This document shows, in pieces, positions 40,324 through 52,119 of a stretch of 64,000 bases of DNA (position 1 is the stretch's first letter; the number at the start of each line of letters is the position of its first letter). The notes beneath the pieces were generated by a model. That model made no database searches and was not told where the DNA came from. It was given only the letters and a program-made list of their open reading frames with translations. The stretch is from positions 124,001 to 188,000 of the IMG/VR virus record IMGVR_UViG_3300028829_003504. The stretch is one strand, 5' to 3'. The translations under genes were made by a program, and so were the position numbers.

Positions 40324-40399
40324 TGGTGGGTCGTGCAAGATTCGAACTTGCGGCAAATTGGTTAAAAGCCAACTGCTCTACCAACTGAGCTAACGACCC
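40324..40399 (-). tRNA. tRNA-Lys(UUU)
   Basis: GGGTCGTTAGCTCAGTTGGTAGAGCAGTTGGCTTTTAACCAATTTGCCGCAAGTTCGAATCTTGCACGACCCACCA; 76 nt cloverleaf with encoded CCA. Confidence 0.97.
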
Positions 40400-40746: not shown

Positions 40747-40756
40747 TTTACAGTTT
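40747..40756 (-). promoter_or_regulatory. AAACTGTAAA promoter motif (representative copy)
   Basis: (A)AACTGTAAA core also at about 13840, 14406, 15843, 20829, 40423, 43485, 45353, 52079, 59585, 59608 (minus) and CTGTAAA near 56565, 62574, 62962, 63994 (plus), always oriented with the downstream gene. Confidence 0.7.
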
Positions 40757-40775: not shown

Positions 40776-42296
40776 TTAATCTTCTTCGTCCGCAACTAGG
40801 TCACCTTTACCTGCACAGATAAGAGCGAAATTCTTGAGAGCTTTACCATTCGCCAATTGCTTCTTACACCAGAAGCGTATATCAACAGGCTTAACACCAA
40901 GTAAGTCGCAAGTTTCTTTTACCTGTCGCTTGTTACCTAACACCAGTGCTTTGAATGATAACCAAGAACACTTCTTAGCTCCGTGTAAGGGACAATCTTC
41001 GTGGAATTTCATATTACCACGAGTACCGCCTACTACGCCTAACATCTTCAAGAAGTTCCAAGTATCAAACACTGGATCTAGGCCTCTAGCCACACCATCA
41101 GCATCACGAATCCAGATACGTGCAAATGTATCTTGATACTGTAGCCCGCCAAGTTTGTTCTTGATAACTTTCAAGTTGATGAAACGATATTCGTCGTTTC
41201 CTTCGTGCTCAACAGACTTCTCATCCATAGTAGGACCTTTACCCCAACCTGAAGGTAGAGCACGGCTGGTAGATTTTATTCTACAGTCAGAGAAGAATTT
41301 CAACGCTTCACCTCCCGGCTCATACTCAGGATTACCAAACATAGTCGCAGGCTTCTGTCGTAATTGATTAACCCCAAATACTGTCATGCGTTTCTTCTTC
41401 ATAGAACCTTTAATGCGTTTAAGTTCTTTGGAGAACATCCGCGCTTGCAGGGCCATTGCATTGCTACCTTCGTCCGTATCTTCTTGCCTAGGTAACATAG
41501 CAGGATAGGAATCTAGTAGCGCGATTGCTTGCATCATACCATCTGCGGCAGGCACTTTAATTTTGTTATGCTTAGATAAGTACTTAGGGTCATATACAGA
41601 TTTGAATCGCTTGAGTAATTTCTTATCATGAGGGAACAAATAGTAATACTCTTTGCCTAATTTAACTTTATCAGGTAGTATTCTTTTTAGTCGATTATAG
41701 AATTCGAAAAATTCCTCGCCTCCATCAGTGGAGATATAATCAACGATCGGAGGTGTAATTTCCTCACCTGTATCGGGGTCTCTCTCTCCGAAGATTTGGC
41801 TCAACGTTTGCTTAACGCCTTGTGATTTTAGAATACTCTCAATGTAGTCAGGGCTACCTGAACCTTCGTAATCCCAGTAGCTGGCTTTACCCTCAAAGCC
41901 TTGTTTAATTATAGCTGACATTATTGTCATAGCTATTGTTGTCTTAGCGGATTGTTCACCACCAAAGATAGTGTACCAGCCACCTGATACGATACCACCG
42001 CCTATTAATAGATCAAGTGATACTAAACCTGTATGTAAACGAGGTTCGTCTGGGTCAAAAGCTGTACCTGCAAGACCCATCTTCTTCTTAACGTCTGTAA
42101 TGGATTCATCTAACATGTTTTCCAATAGAGATTTCGTTAAGGCGACTGCCTCTGAATGAGCGTTATCTGCAACTAAGGTAGCTTTATCGGAATTCTTGGC
42201 TTTCTTAGTTTTAGGAACATCAGCAACCTCAAGAGCCTTTTTGGCTCCTTTAGTTACTTTGGCTGATTTAGATCTAGTCGCTGTTTTAGTTGCCAT
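40776..42296 (-). CDS. recA: RecA/UvsX-like recombinase
   Basis: TGLVSLDLLIGGGI, Walker A GGEQSAKTT, DYE, LLDSY, ALQARMFS, VNQLR, MFGNPEYEPGGEALKFFSD, KNKLG. Confidence 0.93.
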   Translation of the reverse strand: MATKTATRSKSAKVTKGAKKALEVADVPKTKKAKNSDKATLVADNAHSEAVALTKSLLENMLDESITDVKKKMGLAGTAFDPDEPRLHTGLVSLDLLIGGGIVSGGWYTIFGGEQSAKTTIAMTIMSAIIKQGFEGKASYWDYEGSGSPDYIESILKSQGVKQTLSQIFGERDPDTGEEITPPIVDYISTDGGEEFFEFYNRLKRILPDKVKLGKEYYYLFPHDKKLLKRFKSVYDPKYLSKHNKIKVPAADGMMQAIALLDSYPAMLPRQEDTDEGSNAMALQARMFSKELKRIKGSMKKKRMTVFGVNQLRQKPATMFGNPEYEPGGEALKFFSDCRIKSTSRALPSGWGKGPTMDEKSVEHEGNDEYRFINLKVIKNKLGGLQYQDTFARIWIRDADGVARGLDPVFDTWNFLKMLGVVGGTRGNMKFHEDCPLHGAKKCSWLSFKALVLGNKRQVKETCDLLGVKPVDIRFWCKKQLANGKALKNFALICAGKGDLVADEED

Positions 42297-42300
42297 CTAA

Positions 42301-43449
<1,149 letters not shown>

Positions 43450-43491
43450 TTAGATTTTCTCCTGTTTATAATTCGAAAAATACATTTACAG

Positions 43492-44541
43492 TTATGTATT
43501 TTGTAGACCTTGTTCGCGCATAGATACGCGCATCTTCTCTTTTTCAGATTTAGAAAACACCTCACCTATATCAAGGGTTAGTCTAGCACAACCATTAATG
43601 TCGGCGTGTTTTGCCAAGTACATAATATTATTAGACTCTCTCATGTTAGCAACCTCACTACTTAAGTCATAGTCGTTTGTAACTTTGTTATGTAGACCTT
43701 CCGCTGAATCCCCATCATCGTCTTCAACTATTTGGTCTAAGCTTGTGCTGAAATTAATCATAGTATTGGCCGAGCCTGACATAGCTAATTTTTTCTTCTG
43801 ACCTTGAGGCACAGTAAAGGCTATGCCGTACTCATGCTCAGAACTACTACAGGTCTGAGCATTAAACATCCACCACTTTATGTAGGAAGTTAAGGCACCT
43901 TTGTTTGCATCGTACTTGTTTAGAGCAATTATAACATTCTGTAGGAGACCTTGCCTTACGTCTAGGAAGTCGTATTGGTTATGAGGATTGGCCATAACGT
44001 GCTGCTTAGCCTGTGTGCTGCAAAGCCTTACGTATTCTTTCGCTACGTCTTGTTGATAGGCGTAAAACATCTTTAGGTAGTCAGTACTTTGATTGAAGCA
44101 TAAATATAAGTCGGACCGCTTTGTTGCGCCTAGGTCACGTTGGATTAGATCCAAATGCCTTGACCAACGGGCCCTGCGATTATCGAAGTTTGTAAGAAAT
44201 TTATCGTACAAACAATTAAACTCATCCTTATACCTATCCAACAAACGTTTAATGAAACAGTGGATAAAACTCCTCTCTATTCCAATCTTACGTATTAAGT
44301 TAAACTTCTTCTGCCTGTCAGACTCAAGATGTATCTGGCATAATATGTTAATGGCGTCTTCCCGTTCAAGAGCAACGAGTTTACGCTTTTTGTTTCTCGT
44401 TATCACCGATAGTATGTGAACCATTTGGGTATCAAATATATCAGTATGCAGGACAACGGGCTCAAGTGCATTATAGAGTAAGGTATCCATAATCTCACTT
44501 ATCTGGTCGCCCGTTAAGTTCTTGGTTTGGTCATCGGACAT
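43492..44541 (-). CDS. Sigma70-family sigma factor
   Basis: FLDVRQGLLQNVIIALNKYDANKGALTSYIKWWM matches region 2 (DLIQEG...AVDKFD..RG.KFSTYATWWI); TSLDQ matches region 3. Confidence 0.8.
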   Translation of the reverse strand: MSDDQTKNLTGDQISEIMDTLLYNALEPVVLHTDIFDTQMVHILSVITRNKKRKLVALEREDAINILCQIHLESDRQKKFNLIRKIGIERSFIHCFIKRLLDRYKDEFNCLYDKFLTNFDNRRARWSRHLDLIQRDLGATKRSDLYLCFNQSTDYLKMFYAYQQDVAKEYVRLCSTQAKQHVMANPHNQYDFLDVRQGLLQNVIIALNKYDANKGALTSYIKWWMFNAQTCSSSEHEYGIAFTVPQGQKKKLAMSGSANTMINFSTSLDQIVEDDDGDSAEGLHNKVTNDYDLSSEVANMRESNNIMYLAKHADINGCARLTLDIGEVFSKSEKEKMRVSMREQGLQNT

Positions 44542-45454: not shown

Positions 45455-46132
45455 TTAGGCTCCTTTACTTATAACAGCGTCAGCAGTGGCGATAAGATGT
45501 TTACAAAGACCAGGCGTCTCACCTGGGTTAGTAAAGTTAGGCTTATCACCGTTGCCATATATAATACGCGCCGCGCCGTACTTGGCGTTTGCATATTCCC
45601 ACATGTATGTATTATTCTCACAGTCACATGATACTAGGACTTTCTGATTCCTATCTGAAATCTTCAAGTCGTGAAGTCTACCTATGATAGTAACTTTATG
45701 ATCTCGCGGCGTAGCGTCAGGTCGCCATGTATCAAAATGCCTACATGTGGCTGTAACCGCAGGTAACCCTGACGCCGTCTTAGTACGCTTGAACTTTCTA
45801 ACTGTAGTCTCAGAGCCATTCTCCTTCATCAATCTAGGAGTATTACGGTACAGTTGCTTCAAAGTCAAACCTTTCTTAGAAAGAGATGTCTCGGGAAGCT
45901 GCTGCACCAGGTTCTGACCTTGCAAAGGCATTATACGAACCTGTCTTACTTTTTGCGCCCTAGTAGTTCTAGTGGCTGCTTTCTTCGGCTTTGCTTTTGC
46001 TGCCGTAGACTCAAGACCTTTATACTTAGTTTTACGTGTCGAGGTACGGGCTTTACTGGCGCGTTCAGCGTTACGCTTAGCTGGAGACTTGGTTTTCTTA
46101 ACAGAGGATTTAATTCCAGTGTATTTGGGCAT
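45455..46132 (-). CDS. SWIM-like Zn-finger protein with basic N-terminus
   Basis: VSCDCE...NP...GLCKHLIA. Confidence 0.7.
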   Translation of the reverse strand: MPKYTGIKSSVKKTKSPAKRNAERASKARTSTRKTKYKGLESTAAKAKPKKAATRTTRAQKVRQVRIMPLQGQNLVQQLPETSLSKKGLTLKQLYRNTPRLMKENGSETTVRKFKRTKTASGLPAVTATCRHFDTWRPDATPRDHKVTIIGRLHDLKISDRNQKVLVSCDCENNTYMWEYANAKYGAARIIYGNGDKPNFTNPGETPGLCKHLIATADAVISKGA

Positions 46133-46167: not shown

Positions 46168-46608
46168 TTACTTATCGTGAGTCATCCATTTCAACCCTTC
46201 TAGAGTATCGTGCAATTTAAACAATCGAGTCTTAGTGCCTTCTTTTGTTTCACCTACGATATAAAGATTAGCGCTGTAATTACTAGGTACCTTATCTTTA
46301 ATCTGTTTAAGGGAGGCATAAGATTTCTTACCTTTCTTCTTACCCTTATACAATGAGTAGGAAGAATACTTTTCGCCCAACCAGCTCTTAACAATCTCAA
46401 GCATTTCATCAGGATATTTGTACTGCATCTCCTCGTCATTCAAACGATAGAACATCGTGTTTGCACCGCCCTTACCGACTAGGTAAGTAACGCCAGCAAC
46501 AGTTGCTAAGAACTGCCACTGGAAAATCTTTCTTTCTTCGGGAGTCAATGAAGCTTCTTTAAGTAAAGCTCCTTTCACTTGGTCATGTAGTACTTTAAAT
46601 GGATTCAC
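46168..46608 (-). CDS. Hypothetical protein at the end of the modification operon
   Basis: 146 aa, GTG start. Confidence 0.65.
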   Translation of the reverse strand: MNPFKVLHDQVKGALLKEASLTPEERKIFQWQFLATVAGVTYLVGKGGANTMFYRLNDEEMQYKYPDEMLEIVKSWLGEKYSSYSLYKGKKKGKKSYASLKQIKDKVPSNYSANLYIVGETKEGTKTRLFKLHDTLEGLKWMTHDK

Positions 46609-46622
46609 GTTACCGCCTGTAG

Positions 46623-47510
46623 TTACAATAGTTCTTTTGGTATTTTACCTAACCGAACATCGTTATATATCGCAACTACTGATTTAGAGTTTCGTATATT
46701 CCAGTCAGAGCTAAGTAGTTTATCGCTAAAGTTGTCTGCGATGTTAGTATCACCTAATTGAAAGTTCTGGTGAGGCTTAACTATACATTTTTTCAAGTCA
46801 TCGGCAAAGGCTTCACGTAACTGGCGTTTCTGAGGCTTGTGCATCTCCTCGTAAGTCCCGACCGATAACATTTCTGCCCACACACGGCAAGTAGTGAAAG
46901 GTATGTGGAAGATTTTATCTTTCTTGTAAGCCAAGTTCTGGAAGAAAGTATTTTGAATCTTTACGTCACCGCGAAAGTTAGATTGCCAGTACTTCTTAAC
47001 AATATCTTTGGCGTGCATACTAGGTTTCTTAGCAGTGGCGAAGTAGATATCTGAATCAAAGCCAACTACAATATGCTTTGCTGGGCAGTTACGTACTGCT
47101 TGCATCATAGGCCAGATACATTCAATTGAACTTTTCTTAATAAGACCTAACTTACCGACAGCATGTTTAACCCAACTCTTTAGGTGTTTCTCGGAAGAGT
47201 TTAAAATAACTGGATTAAACTCCAAGCCGTAAACTTCTGAGGCATGTTTAGCTGCTTTGAAGTCGGTACTTTCATGTGTGTCTAAAGTAAACGAAGTGAT
47301 TAATGGGCGGTGTCCTAGAGCTAGCATGGCCCATAGTACCGCGTGGCTATCCATACCGCTAGACATAAATACGGAAGTACTTTGTGTAGTAGGTATAGGC
47401 CGCAGGGCACTCATTAATGCCATCTTCATGTCAGCAGGGCGAGAGCAGTTGTCCTCAAGCTCTTGTCTAAACTTCTCTCGCATCTTTTTTGTGCTTTCTG
47501 ATATAGCCAC
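46623..47510 (-). CDS. Asparagine-synthetase-like ATP-dependent amide ligase (synthetase domain only)
   Basis: PP-loop VFMSSGMDS, STDFKAA, VGFDSDIYF (cf. GEGADELF), IPF, K..LREAF, FQLG; no Ntn glutaminase domain. Confidence 0.8.
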   Translation of the reverse strand: MAISESTKKMREKFRQELEDNCSRPADMKMALMSALRPIPTTQSTSVFMSSGMDSHAVLWAMLALGHRPLITSFTLDTHESTDFKAAKHASEVYGLEFNPVILNSSEKHLKSWVKHAVGKLGLIKKSSIECIWPMMQAVRNCPAKHIVVGFDSDIYFATAKKPSMHAKDIVKKYWQSNFRGDVKIQNTFFQNLAYKKDKIFHIPFTTCRVWAEMLSVGTYEEMHKPQKRQLREAFADDLKKCIVKPHQNFQLGDTNIADNFSDKLLSSDWNIRNSKSVVAIYNDVRLGKIPKELL

Positions 47511-47520
47511 GCACAGTCTC

Positions 47521-48534
47521 CTATTTTACGTTAAAGAACTCGTCTGCTTTGACAAACGCCGTAAGCAACTCAGGTTCGCGTGTAGGATCGAATACAGGTA
47601 CGCTGTATTGCGCTTTCAGCTTATCACGTAAGGCAGCGTATACTTCGAAGCTTACTTCACGGCTAAATAAAGAGATTGCACCTAGACGTACATTAGGATT
47701 AGAAAAACGAGCAACCTGTAAGTTGAATCGAATTGTCTCATCTAAATCAATAGGCGTAGTAGTATCATTAATAATAGTACGGCTAGGATCGTGGCAGGCG
47801 ATCATCATATCAGGCTGTGAGCCTTGAATGATCGCATAAGTAGAACCGCCGAAACTAGGATGCAATATAGAGCCTTGACCTTCAACAACGTCAATGTGAT
47901 TATGGGGTGCAGAAGGTGTCTCTTGCTCAAGTGCCCCTACAATGAAATCAGCAGGTATCGTGTCGTTGGTAATGCCTGCACCGCTGATCAAGTAGCCTGT
48001 CTGGCCAGTTGCAACGAAACGACTGGAGTAACTTTGATTTAGCAATTCTTTCCATACTGATAAGGCTGTGAACTTCTTGCCTGATGCACAATCTGTACCG
48101 AAGGTAAGAATACGATAACCTGAACGTTCCTCGCCCGTACCTTTAATCCAATCGATAGGTTTATGTCGGAAATCGTATACTTCTATTCCGTTTAAGTCAC
48201 CAAACTCAGCAAGCAACACAGGCTCAAGTTTAGCATGAGAGCCTGATGCTATATTTAAGCCCAGGTCAATTGCTTCTTTACATACGCTAAGTACTCTAGA
48301 ATTGAAGTTACTTACTTCTCGAGGACTGAATCCGAGTAATAATGTTTTAGCGCCTGCTTCTTTAGCTTGCGCTAAACTCATATCAGGAAGACCTAGGTCG
48401 TAGGCTTCTTCGCTATCACGGTGTTGAGCCAGACATCGCTCAGGGGCCCAATCGACAATACCACATGCTGTCTTTACTTTACGGAATATAGTTTCGGAGC
48501 CTACATATATAATAAATGGATGTTGAATATTCAT
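47521..48534 (-). CDS. DUF1611 / DgcN-like P-loop protein (N-acetyltransferase family)
   Basis: Start MNIQHPF; KTACGIVDW.PE, DLGLPDMS, GAKTLLLG, GTDCASGKKFTAL, FVATGQTG, DFIVGA, VVEGQGSILHPSF, GSQPD...CH. Confidence 0.88.
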   Translation of the reverse strand: MNIQHPFIIYVGSETIFRKVKTACGIVDWAPERCLAQHRDSEEAYDLGLPDMSLAQAKEAGAKTLLLGFSPREVSNFNSRVLSVCKEAIDLGLNIASGSHAKLEPVLLAEFGDLNGIEVYDFRHKPIDWIKGTGEERSGYRILTFGTDCASGKKFTALSVWKELLNQSYSSRFVATGQTGYLISGAGITNDTIPADFIVGALEQETPSAPHNHIDVVEGQGSILHPSFGGSTYAIIQGSQPDMMIACHDPSRTIINDTTTPIDLDETIRFNLQVARFSNPNVRLGAISLFSREVSFEVYAALRDKLKAQYSVPVFDPTREPELLTAFVKADEFFNVK

Positions 48535-48548
48535 TTGTTTACCTTGTG

Positions 48549-49325
48549 TTATTTGATGCAGACCCAGCCTGCGAAGTTTAAATGACGATAGAAGCAATCG
48601 ATGTTCTTAAAGCCCGCAAGCGTTAACATTTCCTCATTGGCTCTAGCGGTTTGCGGAACAAGAACGCCTTCGAGTGAGGCTTTCTTGCGATCAATATCTT
48701 CGTAAGAATAACCATTACTGTGTTTCATTTTATGATACTCACCGACAAATAATTTGTTCAATCTACTACCACTACCTAGAATCTTCTCCACAAAGATAAA
48801 GGCTCCGCCGACAGGTAAGGCATCATAGATATTCTGAATGATTTCAAGTCGGTACTCTATAGGAGTAAACTGGATAGTTAGTATAGAAAGAATCAAACCA
48901 TGCTTCTCAGGCCAACCTATAGTTTGAGGACACTGAAAAATATGAGGCTGCCTCAAATCATCTCGATACACTTCAACGTTTCGGTTCTCAATGAAACGAT
49001 CGTCAAGCTCGGTCAGCATAGGCTCAGATATCTCAATAGCATAGCAGCCTATAGTAGGGTCTTTAGTGAACGGGGCGAGTGCTTCACCTCGACTAGCTCC
49101 TAGATCAAGGACAGTACGTAGACCGAAGTTTGAGCGGTTTTGCTCTGCTCTAGGTAAAGCATTCAATACGTCCATACCTAACTGGTAAGTCAGACTACGC
49201 ATCATGTCGTAGCTAGGTATACTACGTGATAGCATGTTATCAAAAGATTGTGCAACATCCTGGTTAAACTCCCACTTGTCGCCTGGGACGTGCGTATCTT
49301 CTCGGACTTTGGGTTCGTCTTTCAC
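48549..49325 (-). CDS. cmoA: CmoA-like carboxy-S-adenosylmethionine synthase
   Basis: WEFNQDVAQSFDNMLSRSIPSY (cf. FPDMIQRSVPGY), DLGASRG, TIQF, FVEK, K.SNGYS..DI.RKK.SLEGV, LNFAG. Confidence 0.88.
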   Translation of the reverse strand: MKDEPKVREDTHVPGDKWEFNQDVAQSFDNMLSRSIPSYDMMRSLTYQLGMDVLNALPRAEQNRSNFGLRTVLDLGASRGEALAPFTKDPTIGCYAIEISEPMLTELDDRFIENRNVEVYRDDLRQPHIFQCPQTIGWPEKHGLILSILTIQFTPIEYRLEIIQNIYDALPVGGAFIFVEKILGSGSRLNKLFVGEYHKMKHSNGYSYEDIDRKKASLEGVLVPQTARANEEMLTLAGFKNIDCFYRHLNFAGWVCIK

Positions 49326-49438
49326 CGATAGTCTCCTTATGTTTCTGTTGTAGGGTTTCGACGGTTTGAATAAAGTACATATATCTTACCGTATATAGAC
49401 GGTGATATTTAAGTCTTTACAGTAATCTATTGACCTAA

Positions 49439-49804
49439 TTACCAGCTATCTTTATAGGGGTTTTCCGTTTCAGTCAGGTCATACTTAGATAGAGGGACTT
49501 CATCGGATAGGTAGGTAATAGGGTCTCTTAAAATACATAATACACTTCGAGTAACGTAATCTGACACAGGTGTGGCTGCTTGAAGTATGTACCCTCCTGA
49601 GTCAATCTGTGCGCCTGTATAGGTCGAGTAGTTAATACTGTTTTTAAGTCGCTCAACATCTAGTGCGAACTCAGGATCAGTAACGGTATCCCGTTTGTGG
49701 TCAAAAGCCATGTGCGTACCAAGCTCAATCAAACGTAAACCTAATATCTTAGATCGCTCTCTGCTATAGAAAGGTAGAATTAGATTCTTGAATAGTTTAA
49801 GCAA
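49439..49804 (-). CDS. Hypothetical protein
   Basis: 121 aa, TTG start uncertain. Confidence 0.55.
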   Translation of the reverse strand: MLKLFKNLILPFYSRERSKILGLRLIELGTHMAFDHKRDTVTDPEFALDVERLKNSINYSTYTGAQIDSGGYILQAATPVSDYVTRSVLCILRDPITYLSDEVPLSKYDLTETENPYKDSW

Positions 49805-49937
49805 GGCAGAACAGTCCGATACAAAAGCCTGTAAGAAAAGCCACTGATAATCCAGCTGTCATGTAGATGTTGAATCTATCAATGATTTTCTTACGAGGCC
49901 ATGTGCTTTTGAATAAGTAGATCTTATTAAAGAGCAT
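49797..49937 (-). CDS. 46-aa membrane peptide
   Basis: ATG directly after the transferase stop; MLFNKIYLFKSTWPRKKIIDRFNIYMTAGLSVAFLTGFCIGLFCLA. Confidence 0.5.
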   Translation of the reverse strand: MLFNKIYLFKSTWPRKKIIDRFNIYMTAGLSVAFLTGFCIGLFCLA

Positions 49938-51002
49938 CTATATACCCTTACCGCTTACGGGGCCTTTAGTATAGTCTAAACCACAGCCATCGGCAATAAC
50001 CTTAAGCAGATTGTTGACAATCTCTTTAGTTATACAGTACATCATTTGCGGAGGTACGGAACGACCAAGACGCTCCCATTGCTGCTCATACGTACCTATT
50101 AACTTGAAGTCTTCCGGGAAACCGCACACTACCTTCAATTCTTCGATCGTGTACTTACGCTGTACGCCCTCAAACGTCTCGATAAACCCACCAGAACTAA
50201 ACTGAGCCGTAGGTGAAGTAGCACCGTCACTAGCCGTAATGGTAGGATGAGGAACTTGCGCAGTAGCCCAGTTAAGGGTTCCTCCGGCTTCTTTAGATCT
50301 AAGCATAGCGATGTGCGGCAGTTTCTCCTGCACAGTAACCTGTCTGTGTGCAGGTTTAGGGAACACAGGCTTCAAGTCGTACTTCTTAGCAAGGTCTTTT
50401 CTGATGCCGACGTAGATTATACGTTCACGCCCTTGAGGAACACCTAACCAAGAACCGTTTATCTTTGCAGCACGTACAACGTAACCGCATTCAGCAAGCT
50501 TACCAGTTATTTCTTTGAAGTAACCTTTAGCATCACCTTTAATAAGGCCAGTAACGTTTTCTGCTACGAACACCCAAGGCTTTAAACCTTTTAACTCACG
50601 GCAGAATTCAAAGAACAAATCGTCTACACGTTGCTTAACGCCTTCTGAGTAATCCTTTGCTTCGCCCCATCCATCTTCACGAGTACCTGCTGTAGAGAAC
50701 GCACTGCATGGTGGGCTTCCGTCAAGAAAAGGTAAGTGTCCTTTCTTTATTCCTAAAAGCTTCAATACGTCGGAAGGTTTAACCTTTCGGATGTCTGAAC
50801 CATCGCAGAAGCTTTTAACGTGGTTGGCTTCATACGTTTCACGCGCAACGGGAATAAATTCGTTAGCGTATTTTATATCAATACCCGCCATTTTGTGCCC
50901 TGTACAAGAACCACCACAACCTGAGAAGAAACTTGCTCCTAAGAACAATTTCTTCTTCTTGTTTATCTGCTTCATTGTAGGAATCGTAGGAGGAAGTTTC
51001 AT
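49938..51002 (-). CDS. DNA cytosine-C5 transferase, predicted carboxymethyltransferase
   Basis: Motif I FFSGCGG, IV GSPPCSAFS, VI AENV, VIII VPQGRERI, X QQWERLGRSVPP (Asn replaced by Arg). Start placed at MKLPP. Confidence 0.9.
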   Translation of the reverse strand: MKLPPTIPTMKQINKKKKLFLGASFFSGCGGSCTGHKMAGIDIKYANEFIPVARETYEANHVKSFCDGSDIRKVKPSDVLKLLGIKKGHLPFLDGSPPCSAFSTAGTREDGWGEAKDYSEGVKQRVDDLFFEFCRELKGLKPWVFVAENVTGLIKGDAKGYFKEITGKLAECGYVVRAAKINGSWLGVPQGRERIIYVGIRKDLAKKYDLKPVFPKPAHRQVTVQEKLPHIAMLRSKEAGGTLNWATAQVPHPTITASDGATSPTAQFSSGGFIETFEGVQRKYTIEELKVVCGFPEDFKLIGTYEQQWERLGRSVPPQMMYCITKEIVNNLLKVIADGCGLDYTKGPVSGKGI

Positions 51003-51115
51003 ATAACCCAACCTAGTTTCGTTTGAATTTGAATAAGAGTATAGTTAAATATAATAGATGCCTGTTCCATAAGAGTAAGCATCAATATAATCTCTTGTAT
51101 ACATATATGCGGCAT
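50999..51115 (-). CDS. 38-aa peptide coupled to the transferase start
   Basis: AGGA RBS; TGA overlaps the next ATG (ATGA). Confidence 0.35.
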   Translation of the reverse strand: MPHICIQEIILMLTLMEQASIIFNYTLIQIQTKLGWVI

Positions 51116-51132
51116 AATATGTCCTATTAGAA

Positions 51133-52023
51133 TTATTTACCTGCGAAGCGGTACTTACATCGAGGACAACACTGATCAAGTTCATCATCAAATGTATCCT
51201 CACCGTATTCCTCAAATGAGGCAGGACCTTTACCTTTTGACTTAGAATCAGTAGACTCGTCACTGGAACCTAGTGAAGGTAACTCGGGAAGTGTTTTAAT
51301 TTTAAGGGCGTCAAGCCCCATAGTATCGATATCAAACCCTCCGTCGCGTATTTCAAGTTCTTCCACCATGAAAGCAAGTTTACTATTGTCGAACTCACCA
51401 CCATGTGCGTTAGCTGCAATGTTTGCGGCGAATTCTACTTTCTTATCGGACCAGTCTACTACGCGGAATGGAATACGGTAGTTTCGATTATCTCCTAGAA
51501 TAACAGTCATGAATCCTTCTTCGATAGTACCGTGCTGGCAATCTTTAATAGGATTAGTTATGATTTTAGTCTCATAACCTTTCTTCCTGATACTAGAAGT
51601 ACGTTGATGTCCAGATACTAAGTGGCCTGAACGTCGGTTAAAAACGATACCTGACAGGTCACCGAATTCTTCGTATGACTTACCTAAGTTATCTAATCTA
51701 CGTGCAGTAATGAAACGTGGGTTATAGCTCGCACCTCTTAAGTCAGTTAGGCCCCAATCTCCTTTACGTTTAGAAGTCTTCTTATTCTCCCGAACCTTCT
51801 TAACTTTAAATTTCTTTGTGGCTACTTTTGATATACCTGATATCTCAAGTGAACCAGAAGCAGAAGTGGACCCAGACTTAGGTTTAACTATTTTATCCAG
51901 TTTCCCTGATTTCTTGGCCTTTTTAGTCTTTTTAGCTACTTTAGACTCAGAGGTAGCCTTAGATTTCTTTGTTAATTTCGCAGCTTTCCCTCTAACAGCT
52001 ACTTTCGTTTCTTTCTTTGCCAT
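51133..52023 (-). CDS. ParB/Srx N-terminal-domain protein with Lys-rich N-terminus and C-terminal Zn ribbon
   Basis: YNPRFI...LGKS.EEFG...IVFN....LVSGHQR...NIAAN..GGEFD; CPRCKYRF. Confidence 0.85.
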   Translation of the reverse strand: MAKKETKVAVRGKAAKLTKKSKATSESKVAKKTKKAKKSGKLDKIVKPKSGSTSASGSLEISGISKVATKKFKVKKVRENKKTSKRKGDWGLTDLRGASYNPRFITARRLDNLGKSYEEFGDLSGIVFNRRSGHLVSGHQRTSSIRKKGYETKIITNPIKDCQHGTIEEGFMTVILGDNRNYRIPFRVVDWSDKKVEFAANIAANAHGGEFDNSKLAFMVEELEIRDGGFDIDTMGLDALKIKTLPELPSLGSSDESTDSKSKGKGPASFEEYGEDTFDDELDQCCPRCKYRFAGK

Positions 52024-52119
52024 TTTTTCGCACCTTAAACAAGAATACCCAATAATCTTAATTGACTATTGGGTATTCTTTACAGTTTTGTGTTTAGTAG
52101 TAGTAGTATATCCACTACA

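What the first reader, a model, noticed from the sequence alone, without database searches (positions are those of the whole stretch)
46623..52023. Candidate DNA cytosine hypermodification pathway: CmoA + GRSV C5 transferase + amide ligase + DUF1611/DgcN + ParB
Seen: five co-oriented enzyme genes behind one AAACTGTAAA promoter (52079): ParB-like, C5 transferase, CmoA, DUF1611, asparagine-synthetase-like. Established: CmoA makes carboxy-SAM from SAM and prephenate; asparagine-synthetase domains adenylate a carboxylate and form an amide. Inference: Cx-SAM gives 5-carboxymethylcytosine in DNA, the ligase amidates it, and DUF1611 adds or supplies a further group. As I recall, a CmoA/transferase/amide-ligase core has been reported in a cyanophage, so the core may not be new. 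The embedded DUF1611 protein points to an additional, undescribed modified base, plausibly for evading restriction or CRISPR.
Basis: partly seen in the sequence, partly recalled or inferred. Interest (0 to 1): 0.92.

Follow-up and report, generated by a model that had tools for sequence, protein, structure and literature searches.

The report
Phage DNA cytosine hypermodification gene cluster
A giant-phage gene cluster that should attach a carboxymethyl group and then an amide-linked side chain to cytosines in the phage's own DNA, as shown for a cyanophage in 2025, but with an extra acyltransferase-like enzyme that recurs in related phages and probably makes a base nobody has described yet.

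Summary
On the minus strand, 52023 to 46623 encodes a ParB-like protein, a C5 cytosine transferase, CmoA, a DUF1611/DgcN-like protein and an asparagine-synthetase-like ligase.

The core is already published: CmoA/CmoX/CmoY make 5-carboxymethylcytosine and its glycine amide in Synechococcus phage S-B43 (PMC12783734). The window's transferase is closest to that CmoX structure (8YF3) and keeps the SPPC motif and the Cx-SAM-binding arginine.

The DUF1611 gene is not mentioned in that paper. It belongs to a clade separate from bacterial DgcN (D-glutamate N-acetyltransferase). Every member whose context I examined lies in the same module beside the ligase: 10 of 10 context look-ups plus isolate and IMG/VR loci, about 14 lineages. 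These include cultured Dickeya and Erwinia jumbo phages. None of 80 bacterial DgcN loci has these neighbours.

Some Erwinia phages insert an alanine-racemase-like gene between DUF1611 and the ligase, which points to D-amino-acid chemistry.

Best reading, by inference only: 5cxmC is amidated with an amino-acid-type amine that the DgcN-like enzyme N-acylates. The product is unknown.

This is a new variant of a known kind. It can be tested directly in cultured phages.

The parts
52079..52088 (-). AAACTGTAAA motif, a candidate phage promoter element
   Evidence: 9 copies in the window against 0.36 expected; 8 are on the minus strand and lie upstream of genes and of tRNA-Lys. Its function was not tested.
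52041..52080 (-). 17-bp stem-loop followed by UUGUUU, between the motif and the first start codon
   Evidence: RNA fold dG -25.7 kcal/mol, z -8.25. It could be the terminator of the upstream gene or a 5'-UTR structure.
51133..52023 (-). ParB-like DNA-binding protein with a lysine-rich N-terminal tail and a C-terminal CPxC motif
   Evidence: PHROG 620, E 6.4e-25. Orthologous to PaBG_00176 'ParB-like nuclease domain' at 48% identity. Conserved YNPR and SGHQR motifs. pI 9.7.
49938..51011 (-). CmoX-type DNA cytosine C5-carboxymethyltransferase
   Evidence: Best solved relative is 8YF3 (SpCmoX), E 2.1e-60. SPPC is present, and Arg in ERLGRSVPP aligns with SpCmoX R350.
49439..49804 (-). Conserved 121-aa protein of unknown function
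   Evidence: 43% identical to the 120-aa ORF at the same position in L015. No family hit.
49326..49438 (-). Decayed remnant of a chorismate mutase (CM_2) gene
   Evidence: Aligns with the 3' third of the intact CM gene of L015, including a 21/21-nt identical run. About 170 nt are missing and the frame is broken.
48549..49325 (-). CmoA-type carboxy-SAM synthase
   Evidence: TIGR00740, E 4.8e-29. Best PDB hits are CmoA 1IM8 and 4GEK. 44% identical to PaBG CmoA and 26% to the characterised SpCmoA.
47521..48534 (-). DUF1611/DgcN-like enzyme of the phage clade (probable start is the ATG at 48534)
   Evidence: PF07755 plus PF17396. 7XRJ DgcN at E 1.4e-54 by sequence and TM 0.89 by model. It sits in a clade separate from bacterial DgcN.
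46623..47510 (-). CmoY-type AMP-forming amide ligase (AsnB synthetase domain only, no glutaminase domain)
   Evidence: 25% identical to SpCmoY and 52% to the Sen-NF 'asparagine synthase'. Invariant PP-loop SxGxDS. The family profile hits 1JGT and 1CT9.
46168..46608 (-). p146, a conserved basic protein of the module with unknown fold and function
   Evidence: PHROG 23597, E 2e-37. Present in every jumbo-type module examined, including PaBG_00179. The AF2 model has pLDDT 89.7 and no PDB match.

Best explanation
This is a PaBG-type jumbo-phage version of the CmoA/CmoX/CmoY pathway for DNA cytosine hypermodification, extended by one enzyme.

Steps supported by homology to characterised enzymes:
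- CmoA converts SAM and prephenate into carboxy-SAM.
- The CmoX-type C5 transferase puts the carboxymethyl group on cytosine C5 in DNA, giving 5cxmC.
- The CmoY-type ligase adenylates that carboxylate and forms an amide with an amine.

Inferred step: the DgcN-like protein is an acyl-CoA-dependent N-acyltransferase, probably using acetyl-CoA. It would N-acylate the alpha-amine of an amino-acid-type amine donor, plausibly a D-configured or diamino acid. This could happen before the ligase attaches the donor through its other amine, or afterwards on the tethered group. The expected end product is an undescribed N-acyl-aminoacyl amide of 5cxmC.

My confidence is about 0.85 for the core and about 0.4 for this specific role of the DgcN-like enzyme; the overall figure given is a compromise between the two.

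The ParB-like protein and p146 are conserved, basic, presumably DNA-binding accessories of unknown role.
For: Core pathway:
- CmoX is closest to 8YF3 and carries SPPC and the R350-equivalent Arg.
- In 80 IMG/VR CmoX-like loci, 69 of 74 Arg-type enzymes have CmoA nearby, against 0 of 6 Asn/Leu-type (Fisher p 1.5e-6).
- The ligase shares the invariant core with SpCmoY and the AsnB/beta-lactam-synthetase fold family.
- The biochemistry is published in PMC12783734.

DUF1611:
- It is 33% identical to DgcN crystal structure 7XRJ over the Foldseek structural alignment, full length, TM 0.89.
- 70 of 98 columns that are at least 90% conserved in bacterial DgcN are kept, including the P-loop, TGQTG, EGQG, His, Cys and Arg. 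A defined subset of otherwise invariant positions is replaced across the clade, as expected for a changed acceptor.
- The phage clade is split from 82 bacterial DgcN at 99% support.
- 10 of 10 context look-ups in that clade, plus the isolate and IMG/VR loci, place it in the module. It lies directly upstream of the ligase, often with overlapping stop and start codons, whatever the position of CmoA.
- 0 of 80 bacterial DgcN loci have such neighbours.

D-amino-acid clues:
- An alanine-racemase-like gene with the PLP-lysine motif sits between DUF1611 and the ligase in Erwinia phages pEa_SNUABM_17, _1 and _3.
- One lineage carries a PLP enzyme of the D-cysteine-desulfhydrase family.

Tailoring-slot logic: the same ligase type pairs with a 2OG-Fe(II) oxygenase in 5 of 5 relatives that lack DUF1611.
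Against: - There are no chemical data for this phage or any relative.
- The amine used by the ligase is unknown.
- If the ligase attaches a simple alpha-amino acid through its alpha-amine, as SpCmoY does with glycine, no amine is left to acylate.
- DUF1611 travels with two very different ligase clades, one of them sister to the glycine ligase SpCmoY. A strict substrate hand-off between the two is therefore not obvious.
- The fold is a SIMIBI P-loop like dethiobiotin synthetase and CobB, not a GNAT, so ATP-dependent chemistry is not excluded.
- The window protein scores below NCBIfam's DgcN cut-off (295.7 against 480).
- The DgcN paper itself could not be read, so the active-site residues could not be checked by name.
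Confidence: 0.5

Rival explanations
1. The DgcN-like enzyme is a second amide-forming step. It keeps the family's acceptor type, a free (D-)amino acid, but the acyl group it transfers is the DNA-tethered carboxymethyl, or the carboxylate of the first appended amino acid. That acyl group would be activated by the ligase as acyl-AMP or a thioester, or by the enzyme's own P-loop with ATP. The product would be an N-[(cytosin-5-yl)acetyl]-D-amino acid or a dipeptide-like chain.
For: - DgcN's own product is an N-acetyl-D-amino acid. An amino-acid amide of 5cxmC is formally a substituted N-acetyl-amino acid.
- The coupling to the adenylating ligase is tight and almost invariant.
- A racemase-like gene lies next to it.
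- Its fold neighbours are ATP-dependent amide and ureido synthetases: dethiobiotin synthetase, CobB and CTP synthase.
Against: - SpCmoY alone completes amide formation (PMC12783734).
- Closely related ligases work without DUF1611 in PaBG, Sen-NF and Y3.
- A second enzyme reaching a DNA-tethered acyl-adenylate is sterically demanding.
- The phage DUF1611 clade is acidic (median pI 5.7), unlike CmoX, ParB-like and most ligases, although SpCmoY is acidic too.
Confidence: 0.2
2. The DUF1611 gene is an auxiliary metabolic gene unrelated to DNA modification, for example D-glutamate or peptidoglycan-precursor metabolism during infection. On this view it merely sits in the same early-gene region.
For: The closest characterised homologue acts on free D-glutamate (7XRJ/DgcN). 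The protein is acidic like small-molecule enzymes.
Against: - Its position next to the ligase is kept across lineages only 33-52% identical to the window protein and with rearranged gene order.
- It is absent from 80 CmoX loci of other types, so it is not a general phage gene.
- No DgcA racemase partner was seen in any locus.
- The clade is distinct from bacterial DgcN.
Confidence: 0.07
3. The C5 enzyme is an ordinary SAM-dependent 5-methylcytosine methyltransferase, and CmoA serves tRNA modification or SAM depletion. In that case there would be no 5cxmC at all.
For: PF00145 and TIGR00675 match as for any Dcm-type enzyme. CmoA scores below the NCBIfam equivalog cut-off.
Against: - The best solved relative by 37 orders of magnitude is the carboxymethyltransferase 8YF3.
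- Arg replaces the Asn of motif X, and SpCmoX wild type accepts only Cx-SAM.
- Arg-type enzymes co-occur with CmoA and Asn-type enzymes do not.
- There is no CmoB in the cluster.
Confidence: 0.04

Closest known systems
CmoA/CmoX/CmoY system of Synechococcus phage S-B43 (5cxmC and 5-glycylcarboxymethylcytosine; PMC12783734, PDB 8YF3)
   Same: - CmoA homologue.
- C5 transferase with SPPC and the Cx-SAM-binding Arg.
- AsnB-like ligase without a glutaminase domain.
- ParB-domain protein in the neighbourhood, as that paper reports for many contigs.
   Different: - Identities are low: CmoX 36%, CmoA 26%, ligase 25%.
- Gene order differs.
- S-B43 has no DUF1611, no p146 and no adjacent ParB-like gene.
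- The window's amine and final base are unknown.
Pseudomonas jumbo phage PaBG cluster PaBG_00176-00181
   Same: Same order of ParB-like, CmoX, CmoA, ligase and p146, at 44-55% identity for the first three. Both are jumbo phages of about 260 kb.
   Different: PaBG has no DUF1611; the p146 homologue sits between CmoA and the ligase instead. Its ligase is only 29% identical. As far as I could find, PaBG's DNA modification has not been characterised.
Dickeya phage AD1 and Erwinia phages (Alexandra, pEa_SNUABM series): CmoA-DUF1611-ligase triad
   Same: Same CmoA, then DUF1611, then ligase order. p146 is nearby, and a CmoX with the Arg is present.
   Different: - DUF1611 is only 33-37% identical.
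- The ligase belongs to the other clade, sister to SpCmoY.
- CmoX lies about 18 kb away and carries an intein at the catalytic Cys.
- Some carry an extra 420-aa gene and a racemase-like gene.
DgcN, acetyl-CoA:D-glutamate N-acetyltransferase of marine bacteria (NF041892; PDB 7XRJ; Yu et al. 2023 ISME J 17:537, cited in PMC12363236)
   Same: Two-domain DUF1611 architecture, full-length alignment, TM 0.89, and most invariant core residues.
   Different: - Separate clade.
- Below the family cut-off.
- No DgcA partner, and a phage DNA-modification context instead of D-Glu catabolism.
- Clade-wide replacements at about 28 otherwise conserved positions.

Membership tests
CmoA/CmoX/CmoY 5cxmC hypermodification system (PMC12783734) | C5 cytosine transferase with the catalytic SPPC motif | tested here: met
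   GSPPCSAFS is aligned with SpCmoX and is invariant in 7 orthologues.
CmoA/CmoX/CmoY 5cxmC hypermodification system (PMC12783734) | Arg at the SpCmoX R350 position (Asn in HhaI), which binds the Cx-SAM carboxylate | tested here: met
   ERLGRSVPP aligns with ERVGRMVPP of 8YF3. The Arg is invariant in alignment A3.
CmoA/CmoX/CmoY 5cxmC hypermodification system (PMC12783734) | Phage-encoded CmoA (Cx-SAM synthase) in the neighbourhood | tested here: met
   TIGR00740, E 4.8e-29, though 101.7 bits is below the equivalog cut-off of 193.3. Best PDB hits are CmoA. The gene lies about 600 nt from CmoX.
CmoA/CmoX/CmoY 5cxmC hypermodification system (PMC12783734) | AMP-forming AsnB-like amide ligase (CmoY) | tested here: met
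   Aligns with SpCmoY with an invariant PP-loop and 20 other invariant columns. The profile hits 1JGT at 6.8e-10 and 1CT9 at 6.5e-9.
CmoA/CmoX/CmoY 5cxmC hypermodification system (PMC12783734) | Formation of 5cxmC and of an amide derivative in DNA | not testable with these tools
   This needs LC-MS of DNA nucleosides.
SpCmoY-type glycine ligase cluster | Falls in the SpCmoY cluster with its glycine-carboxylate-binding pocket | tested here: inconclusive
   The window ligase is in a different clade from SpCmoY. The pocket residues are shown only in figures that are not held as text.
DgcN (N-acetyltransferase DgcN, NF041892) | DUF1611_N plus DUF1611_C two-domain architecture and fold | tested here: met
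   PF17396 plus PF07755. TM 0.89 to 7XRJ.
DgcN (N-acetyltransferase DgcN, NF041892) | Score above the curated equivalog cut-off | tested here: not met
   295.7 bits against a cut-off of 480.
DgcN (N-acetyltransferase DgcN, NF041892) | Groups with named bacterial DgcN in a tree | tested here: not met
   A split at 99% SH-aLRT separates 42 rows from 82 rows. The 42 include all 11 sequences known at that stage to be in phage context; the 82 include all named DgcN.
DgcN (N-acetyltransferase DgcN, NF041892) | D-glutamate catabolic context (DgcA racemase partner) | tested here: not met
   No such partner in the window or in any phage locus. The neighbours are CmoX, CmoA and the ligase.
DgcN (N-acetyltransferase DgcN, NF041892) | Acetyl-CoA:D-Glu N-acetyltransferase activity | not testable with these tools
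   An enzyme assay is needed.
ParB/Srx N-terminal domain (PF02195) | Significant match to the Pfam model | tested here: inconclusive
   The window protein gives no hit at E<=1, and 4 of 10 orthologues give weak hits (best 0.0016). PHROG 620 matches at 6.4e-25, and NPR and GHQR motifs are present.

The most novel reading that the evidence does not exclude
A dedicated phage clade of DgcN-like (DUF1611) enzymes works with the CmoY-type ligase to build a cytosine adduct not yet described. The likely product is an N-acylated, possibly D-configured, amino-acid amide of 5-carboxymethylcytosine. It would occur in a group of jumbo phages that includes cultured Dickeya and Erwinia phages. This would be the first DUF1611 enzyme, and possibly the first D-amino-acid chemistry, assigned to DNA base modification.
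Probability: 0.5. Interest if true: 0.75.

Novelty: new variant of a known kind. Interest (0 to 1): 0.6.

Why it matters
The 2025 paper that established 5cxmC as a natural 'handle' explicitly left open which other amide modifications exist. This locus and its relatives define a concrete, recurrent sub-type with one extra enzyme. In some relatives there is also a racemase, an oxygenase or a chorismate mutase, so several new bases are likely.

The same triad is present in phages that are already in culture, so the prediction can be tested with one LC-MS experiment.

It would also give DUF1611 a second biological role. It would add enzymes, namely a carboxymethyltransferase, amide ligases and an N-acyltransferase, to the toolbox for enzymatic DNA functionalisation. 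It may also explain resistance of these jumbo phages to restriction or CRISPR nucleases.

Tried and rejected
- Megablast of the region against 50,697 phage records found nothing. Relatives are visible only at the protein level.
- The DgcN paper (PMC10030869) is not held, so named active-site residues could not be checked. I used clade-wise conservation instead.
- Single-sequence PDB searches of the ligase and the ParB-like protein gave nothing. Only the ligase profile worked.
- The p146 model is confident but has no structural match apart from its PaBG orthologue.
- The 420-aa gene of the pEa_SNUABM_7 type has no Pfam, PHROG, NCBIfam or PDB hit.
- I used isoelectric point as a proxy for 'acts on DNA'. 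DUF1611 is acidic, but so are SpCmoY and the oxygenase, so this does not discriminate.
- E. coli CmoA R199 as a marker: the position is Lys in the window and Glu in the active SpCmoA, so it is not diagnostic.
- The scan of bacterial genomes returned only ordinary DgcN (36-42% identity). It gave no prophage copy and no host clue.
- Viral-contig scans with the DUF1611 alignment found few loci. Most of the recurrence evidence came from the protein search plus context look-ups.
- Two literature searches (DgcN alone, DgcA) returned only noise.

Full report
**What is there**

The window comes from a 261,788-bp IMG/VR contig, so this is a jumbo phage. Almost all genes are on the minus strand. From 52023 down to 46168 the genes are:

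| Coordinates | Product | Main evidence |
|---|---|---|
| 51133-52023 | ParB-like protein | PHROG 620, E 6.4e-25 |
| 49938-51011 | C5 cytosine transferase | PF00145, E 6.5e-45 |
| 49439-49804 | Conserved 121-aa ORF | Orthologue in L015 |
| 49326-49438 | 113-nt spacer (see below) | Chorismate-mutase remnant |
| 48549-49325 | CmoA | TIGR00740, E 4.8e-29 |
| 47521-48534 | DUF1611/DgcN-like protein | PF07755 E 6.7e-49; NF041892 E 3.4e-88 |
| 46623-47510 | Asparagine-synthetase-like ligase | See 'The core is known' |
| 46168-46608 | Conserved 146-aa protein, 'p146' | PHROG 23597 |

Gaps between CmoA, DUF1611, the ligase and p146 are 10-14 nt.

**Promoter claim**

AAACTGTAAA occurs 9 times against 0.36 expected. 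Eight copies are on the gene strand, in intergenic positions, one of them just upstream of tRNA-Lys. It is a real motif and a reasonable promoter candidate.

At 52079 it runs straight into a 17-bp hairpin followed by a U-tract, before the first start codon (dG -25.7, z -8.25). The next copy downstream is at 40747. Function is not shown. If it is a promoter, the unit extends through a sigma-factor-like gene, an SSB-like gene and a RecA-like gene.

**The core is known**

PMC12783734 (Nat Commun, December 2025) shows the following for Synechococcus phage S-B43:
- CmoA makes Cx-SAM.
- CmoX, a C5-methyltransferase homologue with SPPC and Arg350 in place of HhaI Asn304, makes 5-carboxymethylcytosine.
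- CmoY, an AsnB-like ligase, adds glycine.
- ParBc proteins are often found nearby.

The window's transferase has 8YF3 (SpCmoX) as its best solved relative, at E 2.1e-60 against 6e-23 for HaeIII methylase. It carries GSPPC, and ERLGRSVPP is aligned to ERVGRMVPP. The Arg is invariant in the orthologues.

As an internal control I surveyed 80 CmoX-like loci from IMG/VR. Of 74 Arg-type enzymes, 69 have CmoA within the locus. None of the 6 Asn- or Leu-type enzymes does (p 1.5e-6).

The ligase aligns with SpCmoY over its whole length, with an invariant PP-loop (SSGMDS in the window). The family profile matches beta-lactam synthetase, AsnB, human ASNS and CarA.

**What is not in the literature**

The paper does not mention DUF1611, DgcN, acetyltransferases or chorismate mutase. 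'DUF1611' occurs in only two papers of the library, one of which simply lists it as a gene unique to Dickeya phage AD1. No later paper on CmoX is held.

**Recurrence of the DUF1611 linkage**

In the phage database, DUF1611 homologues are confined to 34 Erwinia and Dickeya jumbo-phage records. There they sit in a CmoA-DUF1611-ligase triad: AD1_016 to AD1_018, and pEa_SNUABM_7 gp017 to gp020 with one extra 420-aa gene.

In the large protein collection, the window protein's nearest relatives are metagenomic. I looked up the genomic context of ten of them. All ten lie in the same module of ParB-like, CmoX, DUF1611, ligase, CmoA and p146, with CmoA either before DUF1611 or after the ligase. One more module is on a 216-kb IMG/VR contig.

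DUF1611 is directly upstream of the ligase, usually with overlapping stop and start codons. The exception is one Erwinia-phage subgroup, where a single gene intervenes (see below).

A tree of 124 sequences splits them into two groups at 99% support:
- 42 rows, including every sequence then known to be in phage context.
- 82 rows, including every named bacterial DgcN.

Conversely, 80 bacterial DgcN loci (36-42% identical) have none of the module's genes within 6 kb. None of the 80 CmoX loci of other types has DUF1611. The linkage is therefore specific, old and recurrent, but restricted to a PaBG/Erwinia-like jumbo-phage type of module. In IMG/VR, 11 of 24 loci carrying the marker gene p146 have DUF1611.

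**What the DUF1611 protein is**

It aligns end to end with 7XRJ, 'N-acetyltransferase DgcN' (E 1.4e-54). An AlphaFold model (pLDDT 84) superposes on 7XRJ at TM 0.89.

DgcN acetylates D-glutamate with acetyl-CoA in a D-Glu catabolic pathway. The source is Yu et al. 2023, cited in PMC12363236, plus my own recollection of the abstract.

Of 98 alignment columns that are at least 90% conserved in bacterial DgcN, 70 are kept in the phage clade. These include the GTDCAxGKK loop, TGQTG, EGQG, and conserved His, Cys and Arg residues. About 28 are replaced across the clade, for example Trp to Tyr/Val at window position 81, AV to TI at 192-193, the 229-234 segment, His to Tyr/Gln at 237 and Asn to Phe at 290. 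This is the pattern expected for a retained catalytic scaffold with a changed substrate.

Beyond DUF1611 structures, the fold neighbours are SIMIBI P-loop proteins: cyclic 2,3-diphosphoglycerate synthetase, ParA/MinD, dethiobiotin synthetase, CTP synthase and CobB. ATP-dependent chemistry therefore cannot be excluded.

**Comparative clues to the chemistry**

Modules carrying p146 come in three cassette types:
- Ligase alone: PaBG and relatives.
- Ligase plus a 2OG-Fe(II) oxygenase: Sen-NF, Y3 and three metagenomic contigs. This covers 5 of 5 loci that have the window's ligase type but lack DUF1611.
- DUF1611 plus ligase.

The window, and its 84%-identical relative L015, combine DUF1611 with the ligase type that elsewhere pairs with the oxygenase. 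No oxygenase is present in the 64 kb. The position next to the ligase thus behaves as a slot for alternative tailoring or supply enzymes.

DUF1611 accompanies two ligase clades. One is almost exclusively DUF1611-associated; the other (TARA contig, Erwinia and Dickeya phages) is sister to SpCmoY.

Three observations point to D-amino acids:
- DgcN's own substrate is D-glutamate.
- An alanine-racemase-like gene lies exactly between DUF1611 and the ligase in Erwinia phages pEa_SNUABM_17, _1 and _3 and in one metagenomic contig (PF01168 E 1.9e-8; PLP-lysine motif VVKGNFYGHG).
- A PLP enzyme of the D-cysteine-desulfhydrase/ACC-deaminase family follows the module in L113.

**Mechanism**

Shown by homology to characterised enzymes: Cx-SAM synthesis, C5 carboxymethylation of DNA cytosine, and ATP-dependent amidation.

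Inferred: the DgcN-like enzyme N-acylates the alpha-amine of an amino-acid-type amine donor, most simply with acetyl-CoA. The donor is perhaps D-configured and diamino. Acylation could happen before the ligase attaches the donor through its other amine, or afterwards. This version keeps both the donor cofactor and the acceptor class of DgcN and needs no unusual ligase chemistry. I give it about 0.4.

The main rival, at about 0.2, is that the enzyme itself joins a (D-)amino acid to the activated carboxymethyl group or to a first appended residue.

An unrelated metabolic role (0.07) and an ordinary 5mC methylase (0.04) are unlikely.

**Other observations**

- The close relative L015 and the distant L115 carry a chorismate mutase gene between CmoX and CmoA. 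It would supply prephenate, the co-substrate whose availability the 2025 paper flags as an open question. In the window the corresponding 113-nt spacer is a decayed remnant of that gene.
- CmoX of AD1 (709 aa) carries an intein inserted at the catalytic cysteine and keeps the Arg. L019 also has an intein-bearing CmoX.
- p146 is conserved and basic, and its confident model matches no known fold.

**Verdict**

This is a new variant of a known system. It recurs in cultured phages, so a single nucleoside LC-MS comparison could settle it.

Noticed in passing
window 49326-49438 (minus strand); L015:1516-1803; L115:4622-5089: Two relatives carry a chorismate mutase (CM_2) gene between CmoX and CmoA, which would supply prephenate for CmoA. 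The window holds only a decayed remnant of it, with about 170 nt missing and the frame broken. A phage-encoded chorismate mutase in this pathway is not mentioned in the 2025 paper.
   Followed up: yes
window 13840, 14406, 15843, 20829, 40423, 40747, 52079, 59609 (minus strand), 63991 (plus strand): AAACTGTAAA is strongly over-represented (9 sites against 0.36 expected) in intergenic positions, including one upstream of tRNA-Lys (40324-40399). It is a candidate promoter of this phage. At two sites a hairpin with a T-run follows directly.
   Followed up: partly
window 46168-46608: p146 (PHROG 23597; motif VGKGGANTxFY) is present in every jumbo-type CmoX module, including PaBG_00179. It is basic, and its confident AF2 model has no match in the PDB. 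It is likely a further component of the system, with unknown function.
   Followed up: partly
L026:7008-7952 (also in L006-L008, L010, L025, L027, L028, L125, L129, L132, L133): An alanine-racemase-like gene with the PLP-lysine motif sits between DUF1611 and the ligase in Erwinia phages pEa_SNUABM_17, _1 and _3 and in one metagenomic jumbo contig. This hints that a D-amino acid is used.
   Followed up: partly
L220:487-2616 (Dickeya phage AD1_048); L019:1795-4065: CmoX genes interrupted by an intein. In AD1 it is inserted exactly at the catalytic Cys of SPPC, and the Cx-SAM-binding Arg is retained. L117:1857-4154 has a similarly oversized CmoX ORF (about 765 aa) that I did not check for intein domains.
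   Followed up: partly
L003:9877-10524 (Sen-NF); L117, L120, L130 (Y3), L134: A 2OG-Fe(II) oxygenase directly follows the window-type ligase in all five relatives that lack DUF1611. This is probably another, hydroxylated, variant of the modification.
   Followed up: partly
L113:9058-10035: A PLP enzyme of the D-cysteine desulfhydrase/ACC deaminase family (TIGR01275, E 1.1e-25) follows p147 in one DUF1611-type module.
   Followed up: no
window 45455-46132: A 225-aa very basic protein (PHROG 18980) with a lysine-rich tail and a SWIM-like CxC...CKH zinc motif. It follows p146 in several lineages.
   Followed up: partly
L033-L112 (80 IMG/VR loci): In C5 transferases of this family, Arg in motif X goes with a neighbouring CmoA (69 of 74). 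Asn or Leu at that position never does (0 of 6). This is a simple sequence rule for telling carboxymethyl- from methyl-transferases.
   Followed up: yes
window 40776-44541: Downstream in the same orientation lie a sigma-factor-like gene (PHROG 17569), an SSB-like gene and a RecA-like gene. The modification module therefore sits in the replication/early region, as it does in the TARA contig L014 and in Sen-NF.
   Followed up: no
L002:6328-7590: A 420-aa basic protein lies between CmoA and DUF1611 in the pEa_SNUABM_7 type. It has no hit in any library and may be a further pathway enzyme.
   Followed up: partly
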